In this document: positions 40 to 51,398 of the stretch, piece after piece
How positions within the stretch are numbered: position 1 is the stretch's first letter
Layout: each line of letters begins with the position of its first letter
IMG/VR virus record: IMGVR_UViG_3300050120_000152
Span: 248,001-312,000 of that record
Length of the DNA: 64,000 nt
Direction: 5' to 3' (one strand)
The notes under the pieces: model-generated
Told to the model about the DNA's origin: nothing
Seen by the model: only the letters and a program-made list of their open reading frames with translations
Databases searched by the model: none
Program-made: the position numbers and the translations under genes

Positions 40-1743
40 TTAATTCTTATAATGACGATTTTCTCTACGAGTTTTGCCATCGTAGTGATGTTTACGAAAA
101 TGGTTAATAGGTGATGCAAACAAACTACCCACTTTCATCTTTTTATCGAAAATATATTGACATGCCAAACTACTTAATGTTTGTTCAAATATATGTTCAT
201 ACATGTCAGATAAAAATAGTTGATAGTTTCCTTTCTTATTGAATAATAAAGGCCAATTAGAATAATGAAATTCTCCTACCGCATATGATACCCCCTTATA
301 GGCTCCTGTGTAGTATATCTTGGTTTTCCAGCGTAGCTCATCACTTCCTTTATCATCGGGGAAGATTTCATCGCGTCTATGACTGGCAACATTCTTATAG
401 CCCCAATTGAAATGACAATCGCCAAAGACTTCAGTATGATTCAGGCGTAAGAAATCAAGTTCATTGTCTTCTAGTATTTCAATACTCTTTTGGAATAATT
501 CTGGGATATAGCGTACAAATCCATTTTTACATGGTTGACCTTTGAATATTTTACCTGATGAACTTTCAGCATAATCAGCATCATTATCACCATCGTTAAC
601 CAAAAGCATGTCGTCCTCAAAGAAAACCATGTACTTATGTTCAGATTTATCAAAATGCTTGGCACAAAATACTCGGCCATCGTTGATACCAATATTCTCA
701 CCTTCATGAATAACTTCAAACCCATACTCAGTGAATAATTTTGTATATTCTTTCTTTACCTTGGGGTCAGTTGAGTTATTGACCACATATTTTTTATGTT
801 TATCAAATTCTTTTGGATATGCTTTTTTAAAGGCATCGGCCCACATAGTAAACTGTTTCGGTAAATTATAAGTTATGGCATAGAATGCTAATGGATATTC
901 TGGATCGGGAGCCGTTACTTTGTTGGTCTGTAAATTTTCAAAGAACTTATACACTAATCCATTACCTTCAATAAATCGTAGATTATATTTTTTAGGGTCG
1001 CGATAGGTTAATAAAGTGAAAATACTTTCTTCTGTCCCCATGTAACCTGCGTTTAATGTTTCATTCAATAAATGGTAATAATTATCGTTGAATGCATTAA
1101 TGGCATCCTTGTTGCCGCCAAATATACCACCACGACATACATATTCTGTGTTACATCCCGCATATTGATTCATGGCAGCTTTTTTGAACCCATGTACTTC
1201 AACTTGACCATCATAGGGAAAGGCCACGAACATCATTTTATTAAGATGTGGCGTTATAAGTTTCTCAAAATCTTGATTAAAATAGGCATCAAGATTTACC
1301 GTATTTGCTAACCCGCCGTCTACCCACAGAAAGTACTTTGATGAGAATGGATTCGTCAATGATGCGTCATTTAACATAAATTGCTTAGACATTACTAAGG
1401 GATTATACAATTCCAATTTTGCTTGTGTACTACCCGCAAGCCATCCAGCTTGACCTAACCAGTCAGAATTTATCCGTATTTCTTGAGTTTTATTATAAAA
1501 TGGAAATTTGCGTAAATCATCAAGAGTTTTAATAATAACGCTAGTATTATCACGTTTTCTATGTTGCCATACCAACTCTTCATATTGTGGTTCAATATAG
1601 ATAATCATAGGAAAATCTAATTTTAATAATTTAGTAAAACATTCGAGATAATGATCGAAGGGTCGTTTCATATCACTGTCCATTTCCCCACGGCCAATGT
1701 TGAAAAGTCCTGTACAGATGGTTAGGTTTTGTCTTGTATTCAT
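40..1743 (-). CDS. Bifunctional glycosyltransferase: N-terminal WlaTC/HtrL(YibB)-family domain plus C-terminal GT2/GT-A-like domain
   Basis: N-term TICTGLFNIGR, YNPLVMSKQFML, YFLWVDGG, GGIFGG, GTEESIFT are HtrL-type motifs; C-term has NIGINDGR and YMVFFEDDM (GT-A acidic motif). Confidence 0.75.
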   Translation of the reverse strand: MNTRQNLTICTGLFNIGRGEMDSDMKRPFDHYLECFTKLLKLDFPMIIYIEPQYEELVWQHRKRDNTSVIIKTLDDLRKFPFYNKTQEIRINSDWLGQAGWLAGSTQAKLELYNPLVMSKQFMLNDASLTNPFSSKYFLWVDGGLANTVNLDAYFNQDFEKLITPHLNKMMFVAFPYDGQVEVHGFKKAAMNQYAGCNTEYVCRGGIFGGNKDAINAFNDNYYHLLNETLNAGYMGTEESIFTLLTYRDPKKYNLRFIEGNGLVYKFFENLQTNKVTAPDPEYPLAFYAITYNLPKQFTMWADAFKKAYPKEFDKHKKYVVNNSTDPKVKKEYTKLFTEYGFEVIHEGENIGINDGRVFCAKHFDKSEHKYMVFFEDDMLLVNDGDNDADYAESSSGKIFKGQPCKNGFVRYIPELFQKSIEILEDNELDFLRLNHTEVFGDCHFNWGYKNVASHRRDEIFPDDKGSDELRWKTKIYYTGAYKGVSYAVGEFHYSNWPLLFNKKGNYQLFLSDMYEHIFEQTLSSLACQYIFDKKMKVGSLFASPINHFRKHHYDGKTRRENRHYKN

Positions 1744-1792: not shown

Positions 1793-2641
1793 CTACAATA
1801 CATCTTCGAAAAAAGTGCTAAAGGGTTTCATAGTAGATTCAAAGCAATCCCAATCTTCATGATACCACGTATCAAATTCATATATTTCAAATTTGTCAGG
1901 ATACTTTTGATATACTAAGGTAAAAATTAGTTCTTCGGGTAATAAGGTATTTTTTGATAAAATATAATTAACTATGTTATCAAACCCATCTTTTAAGAAA
2001 TTTATTGATGAATATGTTCCACCAAATAAACCGGCAACAATACTTCCGGGCAGGGTTTGCGTCTTTGAGTATAATTCTGGATATGAATGTTGTCTATTCG
2101 AACAATAAAATGTAAATAAATTATTATCACTTAGTTTATCTAGTTTATCAACTAGTTTATGAGTAAATATTAAATCATGTTGATGAGATTGTTCAACAGT
2201 ATCTATTGGATTTGATTTAAATCGTTTTGGTAATATTCCATTATGAGAAATTCCTGCATCAATCCAAAATATTTTATCGTTTGGATATTTTATTGCTTCT
2301 ATTTCCAACCAAAATATTTTTAACCACATTAATTCAACGCAACGATTCGTCCAAATATTATCCAATGCATATATTTCTTTATTAACATGTTTGAGTTGAT
2401 GAATCGCATCATGATATTTCATAGAATTTAATTCAAATACTTCCAAAGATACATTAGTTATGGTATTCTTGAATAAATATTCTTCAATTTCTGCTTTATC
2501 AACGGATGAAGTGTAACATAATATAGGTTCGCCCATTCCCGCTAAACATTTTAATGAAAATAAGTAATGATTATTTCTATTTAATCTTCCGCCATAAGGT
2601 GAATGATGTAATTCATTGTAAATTGCGGTTACAAATTTCAT
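1793..2641 (-). CDS. WlaTC/HtrL-family glycosyltransferase
   Basis: MKFVTAIY, LMWLKIFWL, IFWIDAGI, AGLFGG, PEELIFT; paralogue of the N-terminal domain of 40..1743. Confidence 0.72.
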   Translation of the reverse strand: MKFVTAIYNELHHSPYGGRLNRNNHYLFSLKCLAGMGEPILCYTSSVDKAEIEEYLFKNTITNVSLEVFELNSMKYHDAIHQLKHVNKEIYALDNIWTNRCVELMWLKIFWLEIEAIKYPNDKIFWIDAGISHNGILPKRFKSNPIDTVEQSHQHDLIFTHKLVDKLDKLSDNNLFTFYCSNRQHSYPELYSKTQTLPGSIVAGLFGGTYSSINFLKDGFDNIVNYILSKNTLLPEELIFTLVYQKYPDKFEIYEFDTWYHEDWDCFESTMKPFSTFFEDVL

Positions 2642-4972
2642 TTATGCATCCAAAAATTTATAACGACTGATATTTTCTATGGATGACAGTAATAAATAAT
2701 CATAATCTTTACCGATCTTACCCAAATCCATGTACCATAATAACATACCTTCATAATTGTTGAACATCCATTCAAGATTTTCAAAATTTCCGCAAAATAA
2801 TGCAGTGGTAGGATAATGTTCAATATCAAAATTGAATTTATTTTTGATATATTCTCTATCAAAAATACTGTTCATCTCTTTTTTTGATGTAATGACGATA
2901 CAATCATCGGTTTTTGCAAACTGAGATAATAAATCAACATCACGGGCGATATCATAAGCATATTCACGCTCATTCAATTCATCCAAGTTAACGAATAGAT
3001 GATACTTACTACGGTAATGATTTAATTGAATAACTTCTTTACACCAAAATAGTTTAACATATTTTGAAAATTCTACAGTAGAATTAGATTTAAATTCAAA
3101 ACGCTGTTTTAATCGCTGATCATAATAATGTTGATGTGGCTGAATCAAAAAATATTTAAATGATTTAGATTCAGGGAGTAAACTAACATACTTATGATAA
3201 TTATATTGTGGTATTAATAAGGTAAGGTTTCTATCGTCACGGATCAATTTTTTAATTTGTTCGATATCATAACTTATATCAATATCAGCGGTTTTAAATG
3301 ATAATACATAGATAGAAGTATCAGCTGTTAATTCACCTGCTAATTGATCGTCTTTTATTTTTTTGAATTTATTGCTACCGGGCTTTACTATCAATTTACC
3401 CTCAAAATAAACAGCATCTAATTCCGTATCGCGAAGAATTTTAAATGCGTCAGATAATCGGCTTAATATAGGTTTACCATCTACATTGAACGATGTATTT
3501 AATAGTACCCCATGCCCTGTAAATTTTTCAAGTTCACCTAATAGATCGTAAATCAATGAATTTTGGGCTTTGGTTACGGTTTGTAATCTTGCTGTATTAT
3601 CTTGATGTGTAATGGCAGGTAATCTTTCGCGCCACTCTTCTCTCACAGTAGCCACGAATATCATGTGCCGAGATTCTACACCTTCATCAAATTCAAAATA
3701 CTTAGTAGTATCCTCTAATCTTACCATAGGTGCAAACGGACGATACCATTCACGGTGTTTTACTTTATTATTAAGAATATCTTTCATATCACCTACCGGA
3801 TTACATATGATGCTACGATTACCCAAAGCACGAGAACCGTGTTCAGAGTTACCTTGAATCATACCAACGATATTACCTTCGGCAATAAATTGTGCTAATT
3901 CTTCTAGCTGGATATCTTCATATACTTTTAGATCATGTTCCTGTATATAAGTACCAAACTGGTTCTTATCAATAACAGGCGTGCCACTGTAGGTCAAATC
4001 TACTTGCTGTTCGGGATTCTGATACCATAATAATCCACCGGCTGCTATACCACAGTCATTGACGTTAGGTGGAACGAAAACCTTATTATTACGCAACTTG
4101 AGAAGCTTAGTATTTAATAACACATTGAGCGCACAACCACCAGCCATTGCGATTGGCATATCTGGATATTTGTTTAAATAAGGCTGCGCAAATTTAAAAA
4201 ATTGATTTTCAAATGCTTTCTGCGAAGTAGCTGCAATATCCCAAGCTAGTTGGCCTTCATATCGACTCGATTCCAAATCAAAATCATCAATTCCAATATT
4301 TTTAAATAATTCGGTTAGGGCTTCAAAGCGTACTTCAGCGCCACCTTGCACAGAGTTACCAATATAATTAAATTTTGAATAGAAGTGTTCGAAATGAGGT
4401 ACCCAATGATCACGAATAGTTCCGTAGGAACATAACCCCATAATTTTACCAGCATAGACCAAGTTACCGATGCTTAACGGTTCTTTTTTAATATCCTTAA
4501 GATAATCACATAAAATCATATATGGAAATCCTAAGTCTTGATTGAATTTATCAATCAATCGAATTCCATGTTGACGATTAGCATTATATACGTTGAAGTA
4601 CCCATTATCACCACCGCCGTCGAAAGTGAATATTAATGCTTCTTTATAGGGCGATTGATAAAATGCAGTTGCTGCATGAGCTGTATGATGGTCATAACCC
4701 AATGCTTCCTTGGTATGAAATTTTGGTTTTATGTGTTGAACATAATCTGTCAAATAAACATCCACATCACTTCTATCCGTAGTGGAAAGAAGATATTCCG
4801 TAATTTCATCAAATATTATTTGTGGATGTTTACTTGGCATATAAGTGGTTAAGCCGATATTCTTCGAATTTAACCATCTTTCAACTTCAATTACCCTATA
4901 TTCACCCTTATAATACATTGCTATTGCAGCATTATGTGATCCATAAGCAGATATTATCAATTTATCTTTCAT
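2642..4972 (-). CDS. NodU/CmcH-family O-carbamoyltransferase fused to a C-terminal degenerate HtrL-like domain
   Basis: HHTAHAATAF, DGGGD, AGGCALNV, PPNVNDCG (Kae1-like domain); GSRALGNRSI, KHREWYRPFAP, LLNTSFN (YrdC-like domain); about 230 aa C-terminal extension. Confidence 0.9.
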   Translation of the reverse strand: MKDKLIISAYGSHNAAIAMYYKGEYRVIEVERWLNSKNIGLTTYMPSKHPQIIFDEITEYLLSTTDRSDVDVYLTDYVQHIKPKFHTKEALGYDHHTAHAATAFYQSPYKEALIFTFDGGGDNGYFNVYNANRQHGIRLIDKFNQDLGFPYMILCDYLKDIKKEPLSIGNLVYAGKIMGLCSYGTIRDHWVPHFEHFYSKFNYIGNSVQGGAEVRFEALTELFKNIGIDDFDLESSRYEGQLAWDIAATSQKAFENQFFKFAQPYLNKYPDMPIAMAGGCALNVLLNTKLLKLRNNKVFVPPNVNDCGIAAGGLLWYQNPEQQVDLTYSGTPVIDKNQFGTYIQEHDLKVYEDIQLEELAQFIAEGNIVGMIQGNSEHGSRALGNRSIICNPVGDMKDILNNKVKHREWYRPFAPMVRLEDTTKYFEFDEGVESRHMIFVATVREEWRERLPAITHQDNTARLQTVTKAQNSLIYDLLGELEKFTGHGVLLNTSFNVDGKPILSRLSDAFKILRDTELDAVYFEGKLIVKPGSNKFKKIKDDQLAGELTADTSIYVLSFKTADIDISYDIEQIKKLIRDDRNLTLLIPQYNYHKYVSLLPESKSFKYFLIQPHQHYYDQRLKQRFEFKSNSTVEFSKYVKLFWCKEVIQLNHYRSKYHLFVNLDELNEREYAYDIARDVDLLSQFAKTDDCIVITSKKEMNSIFDREYIKNKFNFDIEHYPTTALFCGNFENLEWMFNNYEGMLLWYMDLGKIGKDYDYLLLSSIENISRYKFLDA

Positions 4973-5039: not shown

Positions 5040-5507
5040 TTAAGTCCATAAATATGATCTATAAGTGATGATATTATTTAAATGTGTAGTATCAATTTTC
5101 TTATATTCTTCTAGTAATACAAATGATAAATCATAATCATTTATAGCATGAGCTTCTTCATATTTAATATCACGAATCTTAGCCCAATTATAGGCATCGT
5201 TCATCGTATCAAAGATAAGCTTATTGCGTTCACGGGATAGGTCTTCAGTAGTCACATTATGATCATAATCTGAAGTATTATCATACATTTCATATAGATA
5301 TTTAAGTGATGTTTTTCCATCATCATTTTCCCAAAAATTAATCAAACACGCAAATGTAAGTGTTTCTATGAGCGTATCAATATCTTGAAAATGTTTTGGT
5401 ATTTTTAATGTTAACCATTTTTGTCGAGGATTTACTCTAGTTACTACAATATCGTACCATTGGCGGTTCCACCAATATGAGTTAAATAATAATTTAATAT
5501 TTTTCAT
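5040..5507 (-). CDS. Hypothetical protein
   Basis: 155 aa ORF co-oriented with neighbours; no recognised motif. Confidence 0.6.
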   Translation of the reverse strand: MKNIKLLFNSYWWNRQWYDIVVTRVNPRQKWLTLKIPKHFQDIDTLIETLTFACLINFWENDDGKTSLKYLYEMYDNTSDYDHNVTTEDLSRERNKLIFDTMNDAYNWAKIRDIKYEEAHAINDYDLSFVLLEEYKKIDTTHLNNIITYRSYLWT

Positions 5508-5673: not shown

Positions 5674-7059
5674 TTAATTTTCAACTATTTTATCAATCTT
5701 CTTCAACCAATCCTTCGATGCGCTGTGTGGCCATACGGTATATGTCTTAGCAATGCGGTCGGGGGGTGACATGTAAATGAAGCGATAGTCGATCCATTCA
5801 CCTTTCAGATATTCCTTAATTTCTGATGCAGATAAATCTTTTCGATATATTTCAGAGCCATACTCATCATGGCACCCGACATAGCAGAAATCATAATCAT
5901 CTATAATCATGACATTACCTTGATCGTCTAAGGTATTAAGATCATTCTTATGAATGCAAACTCTAATATCGTTTGATCGGGAAATAGTGGATTTCCACTC
6001 TTCAGCAGAATCATAAGTCTTATATCCTGTTAACGTTGGTTCAGTACGATCTAAAACGCATTGCTGAACACCGCGATATTTAAATGCTACACCAGAAAAT
6101 TCTTCATAATCCTTTACTGTTCGTACAGTACCAAACCCATATTTACCAAAATCTATCTGAGATTGATCTTCACCATCCATACCAAATAAAATACGATTGC
6201 GCTTATGAGAATTAACATTCTTTTCCCACCAATCTTCAGATATTTTACCTTTCTGTTTTTGTTGGGTTGTATGGTCATCCCACACTTTTACGCGGCCTGC
6301 CCGTGTATATTCATGCCAACATACTACAATATTGGGATGATATAAATCATATCCATGAGTATAAGCTCTTACGCCGATGGATACTTCTTCACCATGGAAG
6401 AAAAATTGTGGGTCATGCTGAACTTCTTCGGCAAATATTCCATCAGCGAATGCAAAATGTGCTGAATAAAATCTTGCATGTATAGGTTTTGTGCGAGTTT
6501 TCCAATCATCTATTGTTGATGGTCTTGTAAAATGGGTGCCTTCGGGAATAAATCTATCAAAATCCATTTTCCACGGTTCCTGAATACGAGCAGCTGGATC
6601 ATTCTGTGGATCAAAAGAAGATACATAAGCCGTCAATAGAGGTTTCGGGCTTACATCTCTTACAGATTCTAGCATGTCAATCAATACAGTATCCCAGCCC
6701 TGTATGAATCTATGATGTGAATCTAATTGTAGGGTATATTTTTCTTTCTTATAATGCTGTTGTATTTTGTTTCTAGCCCAGCATGCCCCATTCGTTTTTA
6801 AATAATGCAAGTCGATTAATTCAATTGTTGCGCCGTTTAAGGTAAGTACGTGTACGTCATCATCTAAAACGGTTTCAGAATTTACTACATCAAATTTTTT
6901 ATCAAGAAAATCTTCAATAGTTTCATCTGCGCCATGTTGCCAGCAAACTACTGCGCGAATTAACTCAGGGTGGTTAGCATTATTGATTAGATCAGTTAAA
7001 GTTGGGATTAACTGGGGATCTCTATAACTAGCGATTTGTACGAAAATTGTGTTATCCAT
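5674..7059 (-). CDS. GT60-family (Skp1-hydroxyproline / polypeptide) alpha-N-acetylglucosaminyltransferase-like protein
   Basis: TIFVQIASYRDPQL, GACWAR, YTLQLDSHHRF (DSH motif), FFFHGEE, RAYTHGYDLYHP, YGFGTVRT. Confidence 0.85.
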   Translation of the reverse strand: MDNTIFVQIASYRDPQLIPTLTDLINNANHPELIRAVVCWQHGADETIEDFLDKKFDVVNSETVLDDDVHVLTLNGATIELIDLHYLKTNGACWARNKIQQHYKKEKYTLQLDSHHRFIQGWDTVLIDMLESVRDVSPKPLLTAYVSSFDPQNDPAARIQEPWKMDFDRFIPEGTHFTRPSTIDDWKTRTKPIHARFYSAHFAFADGIFAEEVQHDPQFFFHGEEVSIGVRAYTHGYDLYHPNIVVCWHEYTRAGRVKVWDDHTTQQKQKGKISEDWWEKNVNSHKRNRILFGMDGEDQSQIDFGKYGFGTVRTVKDYEEFSGVAFKYRGVQQCVLDRTEPTLTGYKTYDSAEEWKSTISRSNDIRVCIHKNDLNTLDDQGNVMIIDDYDFCYVGCHDEYGSEIYRKDLSASEIKEYLKGEWIDYRFIYMSPPDRIAKTYTVWPHSASKDWLKKIDKIVEN

Positions 7060-7134: not shown

Positions 7135-7593
7135 TTACGATTTATTAGATTTTGGTGGGCGACCAGCTTTACGAGGGGCTGGGGCTGAAGCCTCTGTAGC
7201 ACCATACGGTGGCTGAGCTGCCTGTTGAGACACTGGTTGTCTCATTGGCTGAGCATCTGGATTAAGTCGGGTACGCTGCACTGAACCAGTACGATATAAG
7301 TTAGGTGCCATAATTTCACCAGAGCGAGTTTTTACTTTTACGAACTGGTGGAAATATTCTAATGCATTCACACCATTAGCAAGTGTAATCTGAGCGAATA
7401 AATCCCATGCCTCATAACGAGCAGCGTCACGGCGTGATAAAATCATACCAGCACGATTACGATCAATATCATCAAGATAGTCGGTACGGATAAAGAAAAC
7501 GTCACCGTTTACTTTGTTGTGTTTCAACACAATGACTTCATAGTCGATGCCATTGTTAAAAAGGTCTATAAGTGTTACATGTGGTAATGCCAT
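7135..7593 (-). CDS. Hypothetical phage protein, probably late-expressed
   Basis: 152 aa ORF with AGGAG SD; CATAAATA box at 7625-7632 (-). Confidence 0.7.
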   Translation of the reverse strand: MALPHVTLIDLFNNGIDYEVIVLKHNKVNGDVFFIRTDYLDDIDRNRAGMILSRRDAARYEAWDLFAQITLANGVNALEYFHQFVKVKTRSGEIMAPNLYRTGSVQRTRLNPDAQPMRQPVSQQAAQPPYGATEASAPAPRKAGRPPKSNKS

Positions 7594-25521: not shown

Positions 25522-28500
25522 TTATGTTGGTGTTGGAGTTAAGGTAATAGTAGGAGTTACTGTGACAGTAGCTGTTAATGTTGGTGTAATAGTAGGTGTT
25601 ACTGTGGCAGTAGCTGTTATGGTTGGTGTGATTGTAATAGTAGGAGTGACAGAGATTGTGGGTGTTATGCTTGGAGTGATTGTAATAGTAGGAGTGAGGG
25701 TGGGTGTTGGCGATGGAGTAATACCTACACCAGAAATAGCTTCATAATGTGCAAAAATACTATCATCGGTCAATGCTGCCCCATAAAATGAGAAATTATC
25801 TATTCCACCAACAAAATTGTTGATGCTTGGAATATAGAATGGTGAACCACCTATATTAATACCATAGGTATTTGAAAATAAATTATTTCCTGTAACTGGT
25901 ATGGAAGTTTCTTCTATACCATTCACAAAAATACACATTTCGTCATTCATTCTACGACATGTTATGACATAGGATGAACCATCTGCAGATGTAGTTGATT
26001 GTATTTCGGCGGCTGGGAAATCTGTGGTTGCTATTCTAAAAGCAAATTTTCCAGTCGATGGATCAATAGCTAATTGCATTTGTGGTTGTTGTGACGATGT
26101 ATTATATGGAATATACACCAACATTGGAATAGCAGCATGTTGCTCTGCAGTAGTAGCATTGGTAGTTATTTCAAAAGTAAAATCGCCCGGAATATCTAAG
26201 AAACTACCATATGTACCTAATACCATATTATTTTGAGTGAAGTCATTATTAAACAATATTGATCTTACCGATCCTGCAATCAATCCCGGCTCACCCAATG
26301 TTATATTACCATTATAATAACCATTATTGCCATATAGCGAACTATCTAACGCTGTAGATGTAGCTAAATCGTCAAACTTATAATAAACTAATGGATTATC
26401 ATTCATTACAGCAGAGTCATACATGCTGATAGGCACTGGTGATAATGTTGGTGTGATGGTTGGTGTAATAGTAGTAGTTATTGTTGGTGTAATTGTAGGT
26501 GTTGGTGTTGGAGTATTAGTTGCCATAGGTGTTGGAGTATTAGTTGCGGTAGGTACTGGTGTTCCTGTGGCTACTGGGGTTGTTGTAGGTGTGATAGTTG
26601 TTGTAGGTGTGATAGTAGTAGAAACTGTCAACGATATTGTTGGGGTTAGCGACGGCGTCACGGTTACGGTTGGCGTAATAGTTGTAGAAACTGTAATAGT
26701 AGGTGTTATACTTGGTGTTGGTGATGGTGATGGTAACGGTGGCTGTGTTGGAACTGCAATATTATCAGCAATATCACATGCTCCACCCGGAAGAATATTA
26801 TTGATAATAGTAGTAGGATTAATATCAGACACATTAACATTTTGTGAAACGTCAATAGCAACCCACGAAGTTTTGAAAAAATCTGCGCTATTTTTCTTCA
26901 AACTCATTGCATCATTAAATGCCGCAAAATAAATGTAGTTAATATTAGATATATCAAAATTATCATATATTACATACATGGTATTAACAATGTTATTAAT
27001 ATTATCAAAATTATTAATAGCTAAAAATGAGTTTATATCAATGTTTATAAAATCTTGTGTAGGATCATTTAAAATACTTTGAATGGTAGCCAAAGTTAAG
27101 CTAGATGATGTAAATATTTGTTCAACACCCATACCATATTTGGTATCAGTACCATAGATATTATCAAATAATATTCTATCTAATGTGGGTAACGTTATCG
27201 TAGTATCAATGATTTTATTAGAAACCGGGTATCCTACCAATGCTGATATTAATTTTTCCCATAGATATAGATCGATTTTCTGTGATTGATTTTTTCTAAA
27301 CATTTTCCATTCATAATGAACATTTTTTAATGCTAATGGTGATTTAACCGGATTTGTGGTTGAATAATCGTAAATATCACCATTTATTGGCATTCTATCT
27401 CTTAAAGTAAAATCACGAGTAAATCTAAGCGCATAACGATTATCATCATTTACTAAGCCCTTTAGACCGCGAATGATCATTTTATTGAATCTAGCAGGTA
27501 AATCGTAAGCTGCACCATCAAATACATCACCAAACACAATGCCATATCCATCATCATTGTAACGCATTCCCGATAATATCATATATGGGTTTGGGTTAGT
27601 AATCAAATCGGATTGCGCCTGTATGATTGTTGATTGATAATTGCTAGTATTAGTAATGGTTGTCGGTGAACCGTTTACCCAGAAATAATAATACGGTACT
27701 AATGCACCATTTGTATTGCTTACGACATAAGTGGTAGAGTATGGGGTATCATACTTATAAACCATATTGGTAATGTCATCAGCGGTGGGGATAGGTGCAG
27801 GTAGCACTACTGTAATATAATCTTGTATATCAGGTTTATTGATCTGTCCCGGTAATAGTGCACCATACATATAATCGTAAAAATTATATAGTGTTAAATC
27901 CACACTCAAATCATATGTACCGTTACGATATATATTTACACTTCCTGAGAATGGAACTACGGTGGTTGTTTGAATTAATGCAGCTAATATACTAAATCGT
28001 TGATCTGAAACTTGATTCCAATTAGGATTTGTTATAGAGCCTTCATTATAATATAGGTTAACTATTGGGGTACCAGAGTTTGGATACTGCGAAGTATACT
28101 CTGATGGAGGGACTAAAGATTCCGTCCATTGATATAAGTTCAGTTTACCAATATTCGATAATTTACCCCAATTAGCTATTCTATCATTAATATTAGGAAA
28201 TACGCCATGATCAAAATATGGGATATAATCAAGTTCAGTAGTATCCATCCAAACTTTACCAGCTTTATATTTTAACCATACATCATTATAAATATTTCCT
28301 GTAAAATCAATTGAATAGGTTGCTGGATCATATGCAGTCTTTATGTCAACTAACGAATAGGCATATTGATCATGTTGATTTAATGCGGGATTCCATATAG
28401 CAATTTGGTTAACGATTACGCCCGCAGTCTTATCTACAAATACTGAAGAATTTTGCGCATTATAGTTATAGATCAAACAACTTATTTGGACATTATTTAA

Positions 28501-31500
28501 TATAGTTGGATCGGTCGAGAACACCACAACTTGATTATTGATCATGGTATAATCTTGCTGATTAACTAATGATTTAGTATTCCCATTGGCATCCAAATAT
28601 GTAATGATAACGCCATCATAAATATCACCCAATGATAATATAATACGAGAATTTATATATAATAAATCGCTTTCCTGTAATGATATAATTTGTTTTACTG
28701 ATGCATTAAAGAAATATGATTGATTGGGGGCTATTTTATTTAATACATCGGGCTGATCCCACCATCGGGTATTATCGGTTAAAGCAATTCCAGTAAACGT
28801 ATCATCTAATGCATTTTCATCTGGTGCAATAAACTCTGCTCTAAACTCTGCTCCTATAGAATCGGAACGTTTTAATTTTAATTCAATATAATCTTTTTCT
28901 TTAGAATCGCCAAATCTAGCTAATTTATATACCCAGAATTCATCTAGAGTGGCTTTATTAAACAAGCTTTGGTTAGTATAGGCATCTATAGCTAAGTTTG
29001 TGCCTTTATTCTTAATCATACCACGCCAAAAAATGAAATCAGATTTTGAATTTACATTCAAGTCCGCCATATAATCTGATTGACCAGAATATCCCAAAGA
29101 CTTTCTTACTTCTTTAATTAAGGGTTTAGATTCTAATACGTTATAGGTATCATACATGTAACGTAAATCGGTCACTGCAGATTCAAAGTTTTGCATTAAA
29201 TCATCATTATGTATAATGAATCCGCCTGTATTTGGTCTTAATGTCATTCCGGGCTGGCGATTGAATTCTACAAAGAAACGTGGAGTTCTTAAACCCAAGA
29301 AAGAATCATATATTAAATTGTTTGAAACGGAATAATTATTTAAGGATAAAATATGTTCATATGCATCAATGAAAGCATGTATTCCGGCAATATATGATGG
29401 AAATGCTGAAATGGTATTTGATATAATTTGTTCGTTCGTTAATGATATTTGACTATATTCATCATGACGAAGTACCATCAATTTATCATGCGTTAACATT
29501 TGACCATACTGATTATATATTCTTTGATTAGTTAAAATATCATTACGATCATTACCTATCACATCAGATAAAATACCTTGACTATGATTTATACGCATAG
29601 CTTTTTTATAAGGATTTATTAAAAATTGTGGGTAATTTATTTGAGGTCTATAAATTTTGAATGATGATATGCCCGATCCTGATGTACTAAATGGTATAAA
29701 GATGCCCGCTAATGCATCGGAATTGGTATAAGCTAACTGAAAACCCATTCCATCAGATGATGGAATGACATAATAAGGAACGAACTGCTTTAATGGATTA
29801 TCAAATGGTTGTGGTAGTATTGAAGCATCAGATGCTGTTATCACTACTCGTTGCGCTTTATTGATTTGTGCACTAGGAATTGAAACATTAGAATCAGTAT
29901 ATAGAAATCGACTATTTACATAATCAGATTTTATTTGATATTCAAGATCGGTAGTTTGTTGTGATGTTGAAAGGACGTATAACCAATCGATAAAATATTC
30001 TATTTCTAATTGCCAATCATTTAATCTTCCAGTATTAGGATCAGAGTTATCAATGTCTTCCGTCATTGTTGAGAACCCGATGCTTGCTAGATAATCGGAA
30101 TATCCATCAATAAAATCTATCATTTGTTGTATATTTGTAATATACAACGGTTGAGAGGCATTTATAATGGTTCTAGTATCTGAGTAATGCTTTCTCCATG
30201 AGGTATTAACAGCATTTCCACCCAATGCTTTGAAGGTGGTTTGAATACGTCCTACAAATGGTGCAGATAATGATGTAGTCAAAGGTGTTATAGCACCCTT
30301 ATTAGCTAAAGCTGCATCAGGATTATTACTCAAGGAAAATGAATAATTATCCAATCTAATAAGATAATATGGAATGAATTCGTTAAATGGTGCAGGTAAT
30401 GCCGTATCAGTTGTTAAATATAATTCGGTTCCCGTTACCCAATCATCAGGTAATGTTCTACGAACAGATGGATAGATTTGCCCATCTATGGTATCAGAGG
30501 TTAAAGTTATAGTTTCATTGACAAATATTTTTGTTGATGAGTTAGCAATATCATAATAAATTGATTTTATTGTGTATGTACCGTTGAACTGTGTCGAATG
30601 GTTGATGACAAATGAAGTTCCTTCGACAAATGAAGTTGTTAAATTACCACTCAAATCAAAATATTGTTGGAATAAAAATCCAGTGTTAATAGATGCTGAT
30701 ATACCAGCATAATTATCATGTAAAGTAGAAAATAGACCATTATCATTGATGGTGATAGTTGTGTTTGCCTGAATGACGATATTTCCGTTACTTAAGTAAG
30801 CTGATGCCGCCGTACCTAATTGGTCATTCAATGTTATAATAGCTGCACTAATTGTAGGAGCATTAGTAGTATTTAATGTTAATATAATTGAATCAGAGCC
30901 GATACTAATTGATGCGGTATATGACATTGTACCAATATAGTTAGTCGAATTACTTAAATCAGCAGTTTCACTATAATTTATAGTTGAAATAGTAGCAGGG
31001 GTAGCAATACCAGCATCAATAATATCATATACGGAAATTTCAAATACCGGATTGCCAGTCAAAGATTTAAACCCAAAGTTTTCTTTTGGATAATATAAAA
31101 TATTGGTATTTGTGGGCGATGTTGATCCAAATTGTACTGTCCACCCTGTACCTAAATTACGTGTTTTTGAATATTTTGATGGTGAATTTAATACAGTACC
31201 AATCAATGAATCAAAACTTATATCATTGAATCCAAATGTTTTCTTTACATTTATTGTATAATCTTTGTTTGTAATATCAAAATTTTCATTATCGATATTT
31301 AAAGATGGGGTATCAATATATGAACCTATTAGATAGGATAGTTGGGTATCCCATGTTTTCCAATATGATCTGAATTGTGATGCCTCGCCATCATAACCAT
31401 GATATCTATTATAATTAATGTACCATTGATTTAAGCCGTTAGAATAGAAAGCTTTTCCATTAGCATCAATGTCACCATGGAAAATAGTATCTTTATGAGA

Positions 31501-34500
31501 AAATACTCGTTTTGTGGTATCATCTACATTTAAGCAATTTATCTTTTGTAATTTATTACCATTAAACGTCTCATAATTAAAATTAATAGGATCAATCTTA
31601 AATGATACTATCATCTGATCGTACAAATATTGCGCAGAAGTCTTCCATTCCCATTCATTGGGGTTTCCATCACCAAATGTATAATCTACATTTGGTGTGA
31701 TAATTTCCTGATTTAAATTGGCATCATATGGTGTTCTAATTTTTGCGGCCGTAGTATTCGCACTATTCCAAAAGGGTGGTAATAAATCATCAGGATTATA
31801 ACCATCTAATGTAGGAGTAGCTGCCATATTTACTGGTATGTAAAGATATGTTATTCCAGCTTGGCCTACTAATCCAGAGGACATATTACCATTAGGTAAT
31901 ATTTTACCTGACGGTACTGTACCATTGATAATATTGTTCCACATGAAACCATTCCAATGTCTTATACCAGTATTGTCGTGGTATATAGAATCCCACCATG
32001 TTGGTTTATCTTTATAATTTTGTAATTTCCACGGCTCAAGGTTTGGATATGGGGTTTGGTATAATTTGGTGTACAAACTTTGGTAGCTAGATGCTAAATC
32101 ATGTGACACGTTTCCTGTAACTGGATGTTCTTGAATTGTTGTAAATTCATAGTTCCATGTAAATGCATTGTTTGTTCTGAAATATGTATTCGTCAATGGA
32201 GTAGCAATATTACTATATGATGCCCATGCCCCAAATTGAGTGGCATTTAAATTTATAAATCTATTATTTGTATTATTTGTAGTAGCGTCATATATTAAAT
32301 TATCGTATATTGGACAAGCATCATACAAATTCTGTTCAACTTGTAACATGACATTAGCTAATATTTGATGGAAATCTACCAATTCCCATATAGTTGAAGT
32401 TGCTAATCTATATAATTTTCTAGTTTTTGCAACTGTATTAACACGAATTATTAAACTCCCAAATGACACGCCATTTGGAAATGGCGTGTCATCTGACGAG
32501 ACGGTTTGCTGAATTATACTAACCTGTTGTAATAATGTAGCAAAAAATAATTGAATTACTGATGGTTGAAGAATAATGTCCTGAATATGTCCATCATGGC
32601 ACGATACGGCATTTAGTTTTAATTTATCGTCAAATAAAGTGTAACAAACTTTCTTTTCAGCTAAACCAAAATAGGGAAGTGTTGCAACCCAATTTTCCAT
32701 ACCAACGCCAGTAGATTGATTATAAGTTGTGCTATCGCCAAACCATTCATTAAATTTTTCGTTTGATTTGTAAATGGTTATTAACAAATTATTTAAATAT
32801 GTTTGAAAAGATGATAGCGATGTATATGAAGTTTGATTTACTAATGATGATACAATATTTTTTATATATTCTTCTTGAATGAAATTATATCCATTTAAAT
32901 ACTGATCATGGCCGAATTGTATCAATTGTAGCGGGTTTACATTATTAACTAATGTAGATGATATAGATAAATCCATCCCATTATTATGTTCTTTAATTGT
33001 ACCACCTAATCCATAATTTATATTATCACTTAAATGAATTTGATTGATGTTTGTAGAATTTGGCACCCCCGGTACTTTTTGTGCTAAAATAATACTATTA
33101 AAATGTGATAGACATTCAGACAAATTAATATCTGATCTAAGTTGATGATCAATATTATAATACCATGGATTAGGCAATTCCCATGAACCATCAGCTAATA
33201 ATTGTGGAACATATTGCTCATTGTTTAATCCACGTTTCCATATAGTTTGCAATGGATAATTTGGTTGTGAAAAGTTTTTATATGAATATAATTCACCTGT
33301 ATCTGGATTAGATAGTTCTTGTACAAACCCATAATCATTCGTTAATGTATTATTGACGATTCGCTTAAGAATATAATTATTAACGGGATAAGTTTGATCT
33401 TCACGATATGTAAATATTCGCGATGCTATGGTTTCGGCCTTTCCTTCTACATCATATACAGTAAACCAAGGGTAAATATTAGTGGTATCCTTGCTTTGTT
33501 CAATTTTTCTAAATGATGTTATATTCAACAATTCATACGGAATCGTAGGGTCTACTAGGTTAGCATTAGTAACCATAGTTACAGCACGACGGCCAATATC
33601 ACTCAAAGCATATTCGCCCAGTTCAATACGGAGTAAATCATCTTTACCTAACGATACTGATTGGTCAAAAATGATAGTACCGACATAATCAGGGTAAATA
33701 TCGGATCGGCTATCTTGATAATTACCGTATTGACGAATATTATTAATATACACCCGAAGATCGCCTTCCTGATAGTCATCATAAAGAACTAACTGATGTA
33801 AGGAATTGTCAAATCTAATAGCAACACCAATATTATAATCATTTATATAAGAGAATGTCTGCCACATCAAACCGACATTGGTTTCATAACCTGCTCCTAT
33901 ATTAGAATAGGATGTTACGAAGACTTGTAACATGGGGTTAGGTACTGGTGCAATACTTGTTGCAGATACATCTTTAACACCGTAGAACATCCAATGTTTA
34001 TCATAACCCAACCATTGATCACCGGCTACTGTTTTTTCTGGCCCAACGGAAGACCCAACCGGAATATCAAATGGATTTGCTATATTCACCGTTAATGTTA
34101 TATAGGATTGATACATTGAGTTAGGAGTTTGCTGGGTATAGGCTACATTGGATACGACATAATATCCATTATTACCTACTGTACCCGATATCTTTATTCT
34201 TGAACCAATGGCAATATCATTGGTAACATTACCTAATGAGGGTGCCAATAAAATAGTATTTTCAGTTACAAAAATATAAGCCGGATTCAATGGATCGATA
34301 TTAGTGATATCTGAAATTTCAAATAATGTTGGTTCGAAAATAGTGTCGGAATAGATGTTAGATGTTAATGTTCTATATTTCCAATTATAAGTCGTTAATG
34401 ACGTTGTAGATAGCTCTAGGAATGGATCGAACTCTATGATAGGTAGTTGTGCGCGAATTTTACCAGAGAATGACTGTAACTCATTCTTATGAACCCACTG

Positions 34501-50531: not shown

Positions 50532-51398
50532 ATGTTAATCTATAAAATAACACATATGAATAGCGGTAAATCATACATAGGACTTACAACGCGTAAAACG
50601 GTATATCAACGATATAGAGAACATTTTTACGTTGCAAAACGTCATCATAATAAAAAAGGTAGTCCACATAAATTCAAAGATATTTTACATGAAGAAAATT
50701 ACGATAAATCTAAATTTAATGTTACTATATTAGATACGGCGTCAACTTTAATAGAACTTATTGAAAAAGAAGCTTATTATATAAAAAAATATGATACGGT
50801 TAATTCTGGATTTAATGTAGTAAATGGCGGAAGTGATACAGTGCATAGAGAGGCGGTATCTAAAGGATTGATAAAATATTGGGCAAATGTTGACGAAACC
50901 AAAAGACAAGAAAGAATAGATATACTTAAACATATGATATCAGAAAATAAAGAGAATTATGTCAATAGAGCAAAAAGTTTAGCAATCAAAAACTGTTTAC
51001 CTATAAAACTTATTTTATATGGGAATGAACACACATTCCAATCTTTATATTCTAATAATGGCTTAAAAAAATTTTGTGATATTAACAACATTAATTTTTA
51101 TGATTGTAAACAAAAGGCCAAGGGTACAATAGAGCAAGACCATGAAATCAAATGTTATTTCTTAGATATTAATGGTAATGAAATTAAATTTAATACAACA
51201 AGAAAAAAATTTGAAAAAAGTAAATATACAAAAACGAAATATAAATCTTATACTTTATTATCACCAAATAATAAAAAAACTGTTATTACTAATTTAAAAC
51301 AATTCTGTCATGAACATAGTCTGTGTATAAAAAATATATATGGAATATTAAACGGTAAAGAAAAGAGTCATAAAGGATGGAAAATATATAATGCTTAA
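50532..51398 (+). mobile_element. Free-standing GIY-YIG (Seg-like) homing endonuclease gene
   Basis: LIYKIT..SGKSYIG.T, R..EH, E..YI, GFN; C-terminal NL..FC..H.L...KGW DNA-binding module; very AT-rich; overlaps gp47 start. Confidence 0.85.

What the first reader, a model, noticed from the sequence alone, without database searches (positions are those of the whole stretch)
2642..3340. Carbamoyltransferase fused to an apparently inactive HtrL domain
The C-terminal extension aligns by eye with the neighbouring HtrL genes: YVKLFWCKEVIQLNHYRSKYHLFVNL vs MSKQFMLNDASLTNPFSSKYFLWVDGG, and ALFCG...GKDYDYLLL vs GGIFGG...GTEESIFTL. The W.D.G aspartate and the E-E motif are lost. Inference: a pseudo-GT docking or glycan-binding module that ties carbamoylation to the glycan pathway, rather than to 5-hydroxymethylcytosine, the substrate reported for some other phage carbamoyltransferases.
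Basis: partly seen in the sequence, partly recalled or inferred. Interest (0 to 1): 0.62.

Follow-up and report, generated by a model that had tools for sequence, protein, structure and literature searches.

The report
Carbamoyltransferase fused to degenerate HtrL domain
A jumbo-phage sugar-type O-carbamoyltransferase carries a C-terminal domain that has the fold of the neighbouring HtrL glycosyltransferases but has lost most of their invariant residues, so it is probably a non-catalytic substrate-recognition or assembly module in a small phage glycan operon.

Summary
Window 2642-4972 (- strand) encodes a 776-aa protein. Residues 1-530 are a NodU/TobZ-type O-carbamoyltransferase. After a roughly 18-aa linker, residues 549-776 have no Pfam hit.

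This extension is a remote homologue of the two HtrL genes just downstream:
- Profile-profile comparison gives 87-93% probability, against at most 1.7% for 40 shuffles.
- The AlphaFold2 model (pLDDT 92) has HtrL_YibB clusters as every nearest ESM Atlas cluster shown (TM 0.70-0.78).
- The best solved matches are GT-A glycosyltransferases, with BoGT6a at Z 12.3.

Of 14 residues invariant in both HtrL lineages, four survive or stay similar. The WxDxG aspartate is Asn here and the second Glu of E-E is variable. The β1-α1 loop carrying a conserved Arg appears much shorter in the model. The first E-E acidic residue survives, and distant relatives (XacN1) keep the Asp and GG.

The domain evolves faster than the carbamoyltransferase part but keeps its own invariant residues. 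Wherever the N-terminus can be read, it is fused to a carbamoyltransferase. The gene order GT60-like, carbamoyltransferase-extension, HtrL-B, HtrL-A/GT is conserved in the loci that span it.

No dCMP hydroxymethylase was found, which favours a glycan target. Inactivity and the docking or binding role remain inferred.

The parts
2642..4972 (-). Whole gene, 776 aa (P0001): carbamoyltransferase + linker + HtrL-like domain; the stop codon is 2642-2644
3383..4972 (-). Residues 1-530: NodU/TobZ-type O-carbamoyltransferase (Kae1-like N-terminal part, YrdC-like C-terminal part)
   Evidence: PF02543 at 1.1e-24, PF16861 at 1.4e-57, phrog_1601 at 1e-123. TobZ matches at 4.7e-46, with the HHxxH, RALGxRS, REWxRPFAP and NTSFN stretches aligned.
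3329..3382 (-). Residues 531-548: poorly conserved linker
   Evidence: 0-44% identity to homologues, against 62-86% for the carbamoyltransferase part. Model residues 1-5 (aa 540-544) have pLDDT below 50.
2645..3328 (-). Residues 549-776: degenerate HtrL-type GT-A domain (the finding)
   Evidence: hhalign 87-93%. AlphaFold2 pLDDT 92.1. Nearest Atlas clusters shown all carry PF09612, TM 0.70-0.78. Solved GT6/GT8 matches, with BoGT6a at Z 12.3.
2981..2989 (-). N662-L663-D664, at the place of the HtrL W-x-D-x-G Asp and Gly (the GT-A DXD position at the end of strand 4)
   Evidence: the HtrL Asp is 100% conserved in both lineages. The extension family has N14/D4/S2/T1 at that column, and D11/N3/S2/I2/A2 where HtrL has Gly.
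2789..2794 (-). C727-G728, at the place of the HtrL F-G-G pair. G728 is invariant (23 of 23); the first Gly is replaced
2696..2707 (-). D756-Y757-D758-Y759, at the place of the HtrL E-E-S-I stretch. The first acidic residue is kept (D12/E9), the second Glu is lost (variable), and D758-Y759 is nearly invariant as the domain's own motif
2750..2752 (-). E741, invariant in the extension family (in the Y-E of ENxEW...YE). The motif is shared with part of the HtrL-B lineage
1793..2641 (-). P0002, 282 aa: divergent HtrL (HtrL-B lineage). Its start codon directly abuts the stop codon of the fusion gene
   Evidence: hhalign 99.4% to the P0003 family. Some homologues carry PF09612. Invariant W126, D128, G130, G204, G207, G208, E236, E237. 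Model pLDDT 96 with a GT-A fold.
40..1743 (-). P0003, 567 aa: HtrL_YibB domain (6-261) plus a second C-terminal domain, probably GT2-like
   Evidence: PF09612 at 3.4e-17, TIGR02192. Atlas clusters with PF09612 + PF00535 architecture.
5674..7059 (-). P0005, 461 aa: GT-A glycosyltransferase of the PF11397 (Skp1 GlcNAc-transferase-like) family; first gene of the conserved set
   Evidence: PF11397 at 1e-76, phrog_24687 at 1.5e-167. Synteny.
5040..5507 (-). P0004, 155 aa: unknown ORF between the GT and the carbamoyltransferase. No ORF of 80 aa or more fits between the two genes in XacN1, RAS14, L012 or L013

Best explanation
The gene encodes a two-part enzyme of a phage glycan-tailoring operon.

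Shown: residues 1-530 are an intact NodU/TobZ-type O-carbamoyltransferase. Residues 549-776 are a GT-A domain of the HtrL type, homologous to the two HtrL genes immediately downstream. It is slightly closer to the P0002 (HtrL-B) lineage, with which it shares the ENxEW...YE stretch.

Shown: this domain lacks most residues that are invariant in both HtrL lineages. It evolves about twice as fast as the carbamoyltransferase part. It keeps its length, its fold and its own invariant residues (Y617, W643, K645, G728, E741, D758, Y759).

Inferred: the carbamoyltransferase part makes carbamoyl-AMP from carbamoyl phosphate and ATP and transfers the carbamoyl group to a sugar hydroxyl. This follows established knowledge of TobZ.

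Inferred: the HtrL-like domain no longer transfers sugar. It most likely arose by duplication or capture of an HtrL-B-like gene. Its remnant nucleotide-sugar/acceptor cleft would hold, in cis, the glycan built by the PF11397 GT and the two HtrL GTs. Carbamoylation would thereby be coupled to that pathway. The target is a glycan, not 5-hydroxymethylcytosine.
For: Carbamoyltransferase part. The TobZ alignment conserves the metal-binding HHxxH and the YrdC-like motifs.

Homology and fold of the extension:
- hhalign 86.7%, 92.8% and 93.2%, with shuffle and reversal controls and negative controls.
- The extension HMM hits HtrL proteins directly, with per-sequence E down to 2e-10 at Z=1.
- AlphaFold2 model pLDDT 92.1, pTM 0.89.
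- All nearest ESM Atlas clusters shown carry PF09612, at TM 0.70-0.78 over 205-230 residues, using two different models.
- PDB matches are GT6/GT8.
- The order of secondary-structure elements matches the P0002 model.

Loss of hallmark residues.

Faster but constrained evolution: carbamoyltransferase part 77-86% identity against 52-68% for the extension in close kin, and 62-64% against 20-24% for XacN1/RAS14.

Always fused: the only two apparently stand-alone hits are 5'-truncated or read through into a carbamoyltransferase end.

Conserved operon: the full order is seen in the window and four loci, and its downstream part in two short contigs, down to 24% identity.

HtrL domains in viruses are often fused to glycan-tailoring enzymes such as methyl- and sulfotransferases.

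Not 5hmC:
- No PF00303 and no Tet_JBP in the complete genome.
- Relatives' ThyA homologues have Asn at the E. coli N177 position.
- The 5hmC carbamoyltransferases were found with Asp-type ThyA homologues (PMC8670742).
Against: - No experiment defines the catalytic residues of any HtrL protein. Reading WxDxG and E-E as catalytic rests on analogy with the DXD and D-E of GT6 enzymes, recalled from knowledge of those families.
- The best solved structural match, BoGT6a, is described in its PDB title as metal-independent, so loss of the Asp alone does not prove inactivity.
- XacN1-type members retain the Asp and the GG pair.
- The domain's conserved residues lie in the same structural elements as the HtrL hallmarks. 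That fits a ligand site, but would also fit a changed catalytic site.
- I had no coordinates, so I could not test whether these residues line one cleft or face the carbamoyltransferase active site.
- The acceptor glycan and its carrier (virion protein, host envelope or small molecule) are unknown.
- The Tet_JBP search has no working control.
- The genome's ThyX-like ORF is divergent.
Confidence: 0.55

Rival explanations
1. The extension is still an active glycosyltransferase with a rewired active site (metal-independent, like NXN-type GT6 enzymes). The protein would then be bifunctional: it adds a sugar and then carbamoylates it, as HtrL-methyltransferase and HtrL-sulfotransferase fusions in other viruses presumably add and tailor a sugar.
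For: - The top solved match is the metal-independent BoGT6a, at Z 12.3 (rank 19).
- The domain keeps invariant G728, E741, D758 and Y759, a mostly basic K640 and an acidic 756, in the elements that carry the HtrL hallmarks.
- Distant members keep the Asp and GG.
- HtrL + tailoring-enzyme fusions are common in viruses.
Against: - At least nine of the 14 residues invariant across both HtrL lineages are replaced or have no aligned counterpart. They include the second Glu of E-E, which is variable across the family (H, Y, I, S, A and others).
- The β1-α1 loop with the invariant Arg is about five residues long in the model, against about 16 in P0002.
- The would-be DXD column is not fixed (N/D/S/T), which is unusual for a catalytic position.
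- The domain diverges about twice as fast as its fusion partner.
- It does not score against PF09612 at all.
Confidence: 0.2
2. The extension is a docking or oligomerisation module. As a pseudo-GT it pairs with one of the active HtrL paralogues, or with itself, to build a multi-enzyme complex. This would resemble inactive GT paralogues that partner active ones.
For: - Homology to the adjacent HtrL genes and strict conservation of gene order.
- The stop codon of the fusion gene abuts the start codon of P0002, which is compatible with coupled expression.
Against: There is no direct evidence. The single co-fold run gave no verdict and counts neither way. Invariant polar residues (E741, D758) are more typical of a ligand site than of a protein interface.
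Confidence: 0.15
3. The extension is an evolutionary remnant with only a structural role (stabilising or solubilising the carbamoyltransferase) and no role in substrate choice.
For: Fast divergence: 20-24% identity between this phage and XacN1/RAS14, against 62-64% for the carbamoyltransferase part. Catalytic hallmarks are lost.
Against: The domain is retained at full length, without frame disruption, in every relative seen, down to 24% identity. It keeps invariant polar residues.
Confidence: 0.1

Closest known systems
NodU / NolO / TobZ / CmcH family O-carbamoyltransferases (PF02543 + PF16861)
   Same: Residues 1-530 match both Pfam domains, phrog_1601 (Nol-like carbamoyltransferase) and TobZ at 4.7e-46, with the Kae1-like HHxxH and YrdC-like motifs conserved. 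The characterised members carbamoylate hydroxyls of sugars and other small molecules.
   Different: Solved relatives with extra length (NovN 687 aa, GdmN 682-702 aa) align only over the shared carbamoyltransferase core. No solved or cyanophage relative seen here covers the 230-aa extension. Cyanophage and pelagiphage homologues end near residue 530.
HtrL_YibB / WlaTC family (PF09612), putative LOS/LPS glycosyltransferases, common in phages and giant viruses
   Same: Same fold (Atlas TM 0.70-0.78). Detectable profile homology over about 200 columns. Shared are the helix Lys (K640), the last Gly of FGG, the first acidic residue of E-E and the ENxEW...YE stretch.
   Different: No PF09612 score. 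The invariant Arg, Tyr, Trp, WxDxG Asp/Gly, first GG glycines and second Glu are lost. The β1-α1 loop is shortened. The domain has its own D-Y motif.
GT6 retaining glycosyltransferases (α3GalT, ABO GTA/GTB, bacterial BoGT6a) and GT8 XXYLT1
   Same: Best solved structural matches: Foldseek E about 1e-6 with TM 0.5-0.6, and VIA Z 12.3 for BoGT6a. From knowledge of GT6 sequences, the GGxFGG ... D-E-S arrangement resembles the HtrL GGxFGG ... E-E-S.
   Different: Only about 10% identity and no sequence-level hit to any PDB chain. The residue at the presumed catalytic-Glu position is not conserved in the extension.
Phage 5-hydroxymethylcytosine carbamoyltransferase (MetaGPA study, PMC8670742)
   Same: Same enzyme superfamily and also phage-encoded.
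   Different: Those genes co-occur with ThyA-type dCMP hydroxymethylase homologues bearing Asp at position 177. This genome has no PF00303 gene and its relatives have Asn-type ThyA. Here the neighbours are glycosyltransferases, the context that the paper reports for carbamoyltransferases on unmodified contigs.
Viral HtrL fusions with glycan-tailoring enzymes (HtrL + Methyltransf_21, TylF, Sulfotransfer_2 or GT2)
   Same: Same design principle: an HtrL-type domain on one chain with an enzyme that decorates sugars.
   Different: In those clusters the HtrL part still scores as PF09612. Here the partner is a carbamoyltransferase and the HtrL part is degenerate.

Membership tests
NodU/TobZ-type O-carbamoyltransferase (PF02543 + PF16861) | Both Pfam domains score above the gathering threshold | tested here: met
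   PF02543 at 88 bits (cut-off 24) and PF16861 at 194 bits (cut-off 27)
NodU/TobZ-type O-carbamoyltransferase (PF02543 + PF16861) | Kae1-like metal-binding His motif and YrdC-like carbamoyl-phosphate/ATP motifs are present | tested here: met
   DHHTAHAA aligns to TobZ QHHLAHAA. GSRALGNRS, HREWYRPFAP and NTSFN align to the TobZ counterparts. Their roles are taken from knowledge of the TobZ structure.
NodU/TobZ-type O-carbamoyltransferase (PF02543 + PF16861) | Carbamoyl transfer from carbamoyl phosphate + ATP to a hydroxyl acceptor | not testable with these tools
   Needs an enzyme assay
HtrL_YibB (PF09612 / TIGR02192) | Family HMM match for residues 540-776 | tested here: not met
   No PF09612 hit even at E up to 1 and none in NCBIfam. 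The P0002-family HMM does not find it in the genome.
HtrL_YibB (PF09612 / TIGR02192) | HtrL fold | tested here: met
   All nearest Atlas clusters shown carry PF09612, at TM 0.70-0.78 over 205-230 aligned residues
HtrL_YibB (PF09612 / TIGR02192) | Remote sequence homology by profile-profile comparison, with controls | tested here: met
   Probability 87-93%, E 3e-7 to 4e-6. Shuffles reach at most 1.7% and other domains at most 0.4%.
HtrL_YibB (PF09612 / TIGR02192) | Family-invariant residues: β1-α1 loop Arg, Tyr, Trp, Lys, W-x-D-x-G, G..F-G-G, E-E | tested here: not met
   Only Lys (K13/R5/Q1), Phe, the last Gly (23 of 23) and the first acidic residue (21 of 23) remain. Asp is Asn here, the second Glu is variable, and the Arg loop is absent.
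GT-A glycosyltransferase (active enzyme) | DXD or equivalent nucleotide-sugar-binding motif, and a catalytic acid/base | tested here: inconclusive
   The DXD position reads N-L-D here and is variable in the family. Metal-independent GT6 enzymes exist. No coordinates or ligand test were available.
Phage 5hmC carbamoyltransferase system | Co-occurrence with a ThyA-type dCMP hydroxymethylase (Asp at E. coli position 177) | tested here: not met
   No PF00303 in the complete genome. Relatives have PFN, that is Asn. The criterion is from PMC8670742.
Phage 5hmC carbamoyltransferase system | Residues at TobZ W408/G421/R423 typical of the DNA-modifying subgroup | tested here: inconclusive
   P0001 has Met, Gly and Arg at these columns by my count from the alignment. 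The paper's text does not say which residues mark the modified group.

The most novel reading that the evidence does not exclude
A clade of jumbo phages (XacN1-like and uncultured relatives) builds a carbamoylated glycan with a dedicated four-gene operon. The carbamoyltransferase has recruited a pseudo-glycosyltransferase, a decayed copy of the neighbouring HtrL gene, as its acceptor-recognition domain. This would be a rare worked example in a phage of a GT-A pseudoenzyme acting as the substrate-targeting module of a glycan-tailoring enzyme. It would also point to carbamoylated sugars on virions or on the infected cell surface.
Probability: 0.35. Interest if true: 0.6.

Novelty: new variant of a known kind. 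Interest (0 to 1): 0.42.

Why it matters
Phage carbamoyltransferases are usually annotated as auxiliary metabolic genes, or are now suspected of modifying DNA. This case gives sequence and fold evidence that one lineage is wired into a glycosyltransferase operon instead. It offers a concrete, testable example of a GT-A pseudoenzyme domain.

It also helps annotation. A 230-aa region with no Pfam hit, present in XacN1, Xoo-sp13, CM1, RAS14 and a handful of uncultured jumbo phages, can now be labelled a degenerate HtrL-like GT-A domain.

If the product is a carbamoylated glycan on virions or the host surface, it could bear on host recognition, superinfection exclusion or immune recognition. The family is rare: 13 clusters among 1.8 billion representatives. 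Both parts are known kinds, so the general impact is moderate.

Tried and rejected
- Single-sequence BLASTP of the extension against P0002 and P0003 gave no significant alignment. The homology is visible only with profiles.
- Pfam, PHROGs and NCBIfam scans of residues 540-776 gave nothing usable. The only hits were phrog_7429 at E 0.005 (unknown function) and PF01133 at E 0.34.
- hmmsearch of the extension and P0002 profiles against PDB sequences gave no relevant hit.
- The exhaustive protein search with the domain alone found 13 clusters and no HtrL proteins.
- Two hits that looked like stand-alone versions of the domain (P0022, P0027) proved otherwise. One is cut by the contig end. The other reads through upstream into the C-terminus of a carbamoyltransferase.
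- Co-folding of the extension with P0002 (complex prediction) returned no answer (score 0.00, controls not run). It is evidence neither for nor against binding.
- The search for related loci with the full 23-sequence alignment failed for lack of a conserved stretch. The single protein and a 13-sequence alignment found only two IMG/VR contigs.
- DNA modification as the target was considered and set aside. The own genome has no ThyA-type or Tet/JBP gene, although the Tet search had no positive control. The ThyA genes in relatives are of the Asn (ordinary thymidylate synthase or dUMP-type) kind.
- The three residues reported in PMC8670742 as distinguishing DNA-modifying carbamoyltransferases could not be used, because the text does not give the residue identities per group.
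- Literature searches for HtrL, WlaTC, XacN1 + carbamoyl, and carbamoyltransferase + glycosyltransferase + jumbo phage found no description of this fusion.
- No reads tool and no alternative genetic code was used.
Full report
**What is there**

The window belongs to a complete virus record of 340,344 bases with direct terminal repeats; the window is C1:248001-312000. GC content is about 33%. It carries T4-like portal and baseplate genes.

On the minus strand, at 2642-4972, lies one uninterrupted ORF of 776 codons, P0001. The finding's coordinates, 2642-3340, correspond exactly to codons 545-776 plus the stop codon.

**The N-terminal part**

Residues 1-530 are an ordinary member of the NodU/TobZ O-carbamoyltransferase family:
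- PF02543 at 88 bits, PF16861 at 194 bits and phrog_1601 at 1e-123.
- NodU is the best NCBIfam model.
- TobZ is the best solved relative at 4.7e-46. The His-rich Kae1-like motif and the YrdC-like RALGxRS, REWxRPFAP and NTSFN stretches are conserved in the alignment.

Cyanophage and pelagiphage homologues stop near residue 530. Only four cultured phages cover the full length, at 48-51% identity: Xanthomonas phages XacN1 and Xoo-sp13, and Stenotrophomonas phages CM1 and RAS14.

**The extension is a real, rare domain**

Residues 540-776 have no Pfam, PHROG or NCBIfam assignment. Because the family scans left the domain open, I used the exhaustive search once. It gave 13 clusters among 1.8 billion representatives. 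The word search gave 10 proteins, all carbamoyltransferase fusions of 773-779 aa or fragments.

Two hits that looked stand-alone are not. P0022 starts at the contig edge. The frame of P0027 reads upstream into the conserved carbamoyltransferase C-terminus. So the domain is seen only behind a carbamoyltransferase wherever the N-terminus can be read.

**Is it HtrL-like?**

Single-sequence BLASTP shows nothing. Profiles do:
- A 23-sequence alignment of the extension (A1) against 121 homologues of the P0003 HtrL domain gave hhalign probability 86.7%, E 4.4e-6, over 202 columns.
- Against 97 homologues of P0002 it gave 92.8%, E 3.9e-7. The tool's own hhalign gave 93.2%.
- The two HtrL lineages match each other at 99.4%.

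Controls:
- Forty column-shuffled versions of the extension alignment reached at most score 21.9 and probability 1.7%. The reversed alignment gave 0.1-0.2%.
- The extension profile against the other domains of the same operon (P0003 C-terminal domain, P0005, the carbamoyltransferase part) gave at most 0.4%.
- A plain HMM of the extension hits HtrL proteins directly, with per-sequence E down to 2e-10 at Z=1. This exposes a shared G-x-x-E-N-x-E-W...Y-E stretch with members of the P0002 lineage.

**Fold**

The AlphaFold2 model of residues 540-776 is confident: pLDDT 92.1, pTM 0.89.

Against the PDB, the matches are GT-A glycosyltransferases:
- GT6 α-1,3-galactosyltransferase and the ABO transferases, and GT8 xyloside xylosyltransferase, at Foldseek E about 1e-6 and TM 0.5-0.6.
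- With the Foldseek-independent aligner, BoGT6a is first (Z 12.3, rmsd 3.4, 188 residues), followed by the wider nucleotide-diphospho-sugar transferase superfamily.

Against the ESM Atlas, every nearest cluster shown carries PF09612 (HtrL_YibB), in most or all of its members, apart from one unannotated cluster. TM by query is 0.70-0.78 over 205-230 residues. This holds both for my model and for the Atlas's own model of the protein.

The P0002 model (pLDDT 96) shows the same order of strands and helices and also lands in GT-A. The refutation criterion "no HtrL fold" is therefore not met.

**Which residues are lost**

Fourteen positions are invariant or nearly so in both HtrL lineages: β1 Thr, loop Arg, Tyr, Trp, helix Lys, W-x-D-x-G, G..F-G-G and E-E. 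In the extension:
- The Lys is kept as K13/R5/Q1.
- The Phe is kept as an aromatic or hydrophobic residue.
- The last Gly is invariant (23 of 23).
- The first acidic residue of E-E is D or E in 21 of 23.
- The Asp column reads N14/D4/S2/T1, and is Asn662 here.
- The following Gly column is variable.
- The first Gly of G-G is Cys here.
- The second Glu is variable (H, Y, I, S, A and others).
- The β1-α1 loop that carries the conserved Gly-Gly-Arg...Arg in P0002 is reduced from about 16 to about 5 residues in the model.

Half of E-E survives. Distant members (XacN1 FVDLA/FFGG, RAS14 YVDLS/FYGG, and P0026 VVDG/YGG) retain the Asp and the glycine pair.

The domain has its own invariant set: Y617, W643, K645, G728, E741, D758 and Y759. 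These lie in the same structural elements as the HtrL hallmarks.

**Tempo**

Against close relatives, the carbamoyltransferase part is 77-86% identical and the extension 52-68%. Against XacN1 and RAS14 the figures are 62-64% and 20-24%. The linker is essentially unconserved. This points to relaxed but continuing constraint.

**Context**

The gene order is PF11397 glycosyltransferase, then carbamoyltransferase-extension, then HtrL-B (P0002 type), then HtrL-A plus a second domain (P0003 type).
- The full order is found in the window, XacN1, RAS14 and two IMG/VR contigs.
- Its downstream part is found in two short metagenome contigs, including one whose extension is only 24% identical.
- An extra ORF sits between the two HtrL genes in some loci.
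- The stop codon of the fusion gene abuts the start codon of P0002.

In the Atlas, viral HtrL domains are often fused to methyltransferases, sulfotransferases or GT2 domains. A tailoring enzyme on the same chain as an HtrL module is therefore a recurrent design.

**Glycan or DNA?**

The phage 5hmC carbamoyltransferases were recognised through their co-occurrence with ThyA homologues carrying Asp at E. coli position 177. Carbamoyltransferases on unmodified contigs sat next to glycosyltransferases (PMC8670742).

The complete genome here has no PF00303 gene (the control rang in 10 of 14 reference genomes). It also has no Tet_JBP gene, but that search has no working control. It has only a divergent ThyX-like ORF.

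Four relatives do have ThyA. The two I translated, from XacN1 and from the relative behind L012, read P-F-N at the decisive position. That is the dUMP-type, not the dCMP hydroxymethylase type.

The context therefore favours a sugar acceptor. This is inference, not proof. The specific idea of a GlcNAc-peptide acceptor rests only on the name of PF11397.

**Mechanism proposed**

Shown: an intact carbamoyltransferase, and a degenerate HtrL-type GT-A domain derived from the same stock as the neighbouring genes.

Inferred:
- The domain no longer transfers sugar. This is by analogy of WxDxG and E-E with the DXD and D-E motifs of GT6 enzymes, which is knowledge of those families and not tested here.
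- It serves in cis to bind the glycan intermediate or its nucleotide or carrier, and presents it to the Kae1-like active site.

Rivals are a rewired, still active GT (a bifunctional enzyme), a docking module for the HtrL paralogues, and a merely structural remnant. The one co-fold job (extension + P0002) returned no answer and is not evidence either way.

**Novelty and verdict**

I found no paper that describes the fusion. In the databases it is annotated simply as carbamoyl transferase or hypothetical protein.

Both parts are known kinds. The new elements are the combination and the decayed state of the GT domain. It is a new variant of a known kind, of moderate interest. Its functional half is plausible but untested.

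Noticed in passing
window 40-1743 (-), residues about 280-567 of P0003: The second domain of the HtrL protein has no Pfam hit, but carries an FFEDDM stretch and a faint PHROG match to β-glucosyl-HMC α-glucosyltransferase (E 0.008). Atlas clusters with the same architecture carry PF00535 (GT2), so it is probably a second GT-A domain.
   Followed up: partly
L004:6719-7699 (-) = G000:C1:240719-241699, about 7 kb beyond the window start: A divergent ThyX-like ORF of 326 aa (PF02511 at 1.2e-9, partial match). It reads T-H-K where, by my reading from memory of the ThyX motif, R-H-R would stand. It is the only thymidylate-synthase-like gene found in this genome, whereas four relatives carry ThyA instead.
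   Followed up: partly
L016 (G001:C1:120357-121256) and L017 (G002:C1:43030-43989): In the two closest IMG/VR relatives the Asn-type ThyA gene lies only about 4-5 kb from the carbamoyltransferase operon. In XacN1 and RAS14 it is more than 50 kb away.
   Followed up: partly
window 25522-36021 (-): A giant ORF of 3,499 codons with a TTG start. XacN1 and RAS14 also have a giant ORF of roughly 3,100-3,300 aa near the operon. I did not analyse it.
   Followed up: no
L004:850-4002 (+) = G000:C1:234850-238002: A 1,050-aa protein made of many DUF5122 β-propeller repeats (PF17164 at 4e-117, 11 stretches).
   Followed up: no
G000:C1:66182-66508 (+), locus L007: A 2OG-Fe(II) oxygenase of the prolyl-hydroxylase type (PF13640 at 1.7e-11, ORF of 271 aa), far from the operon. 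It is of possible interest because PF11397 enzymes act on hydroxyproline in eukaryotes.
   Followed up: no
window 5040-5507 (-), P0004; and L004:13204-14034 (-): Two ORFs flanking or inside the operon (155 aa and 276 aa) have no family assignment. No P0004-sized ORF fits at that position in XacN1 or RAS14. XacN1 instead has an extra 246-aa ORF between its two HtrL genes.
   Followed up: partly
window 7135-7593 (-), P0006: A 152-aa protein with a Pro/Gln/Ala-rich, basic C-terminal tail, just upstream of the glycosyltransferase gene. I did not analyse it.
   Followed up: no
window 50532-51398 (+): A GIY-YIG domain ORF (a possible homing endonuclease) sits between a helicase gene and an Mre11/Rad50-like gene pair (PF00149; AAA_23/SMC_N).
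   Followed up: no
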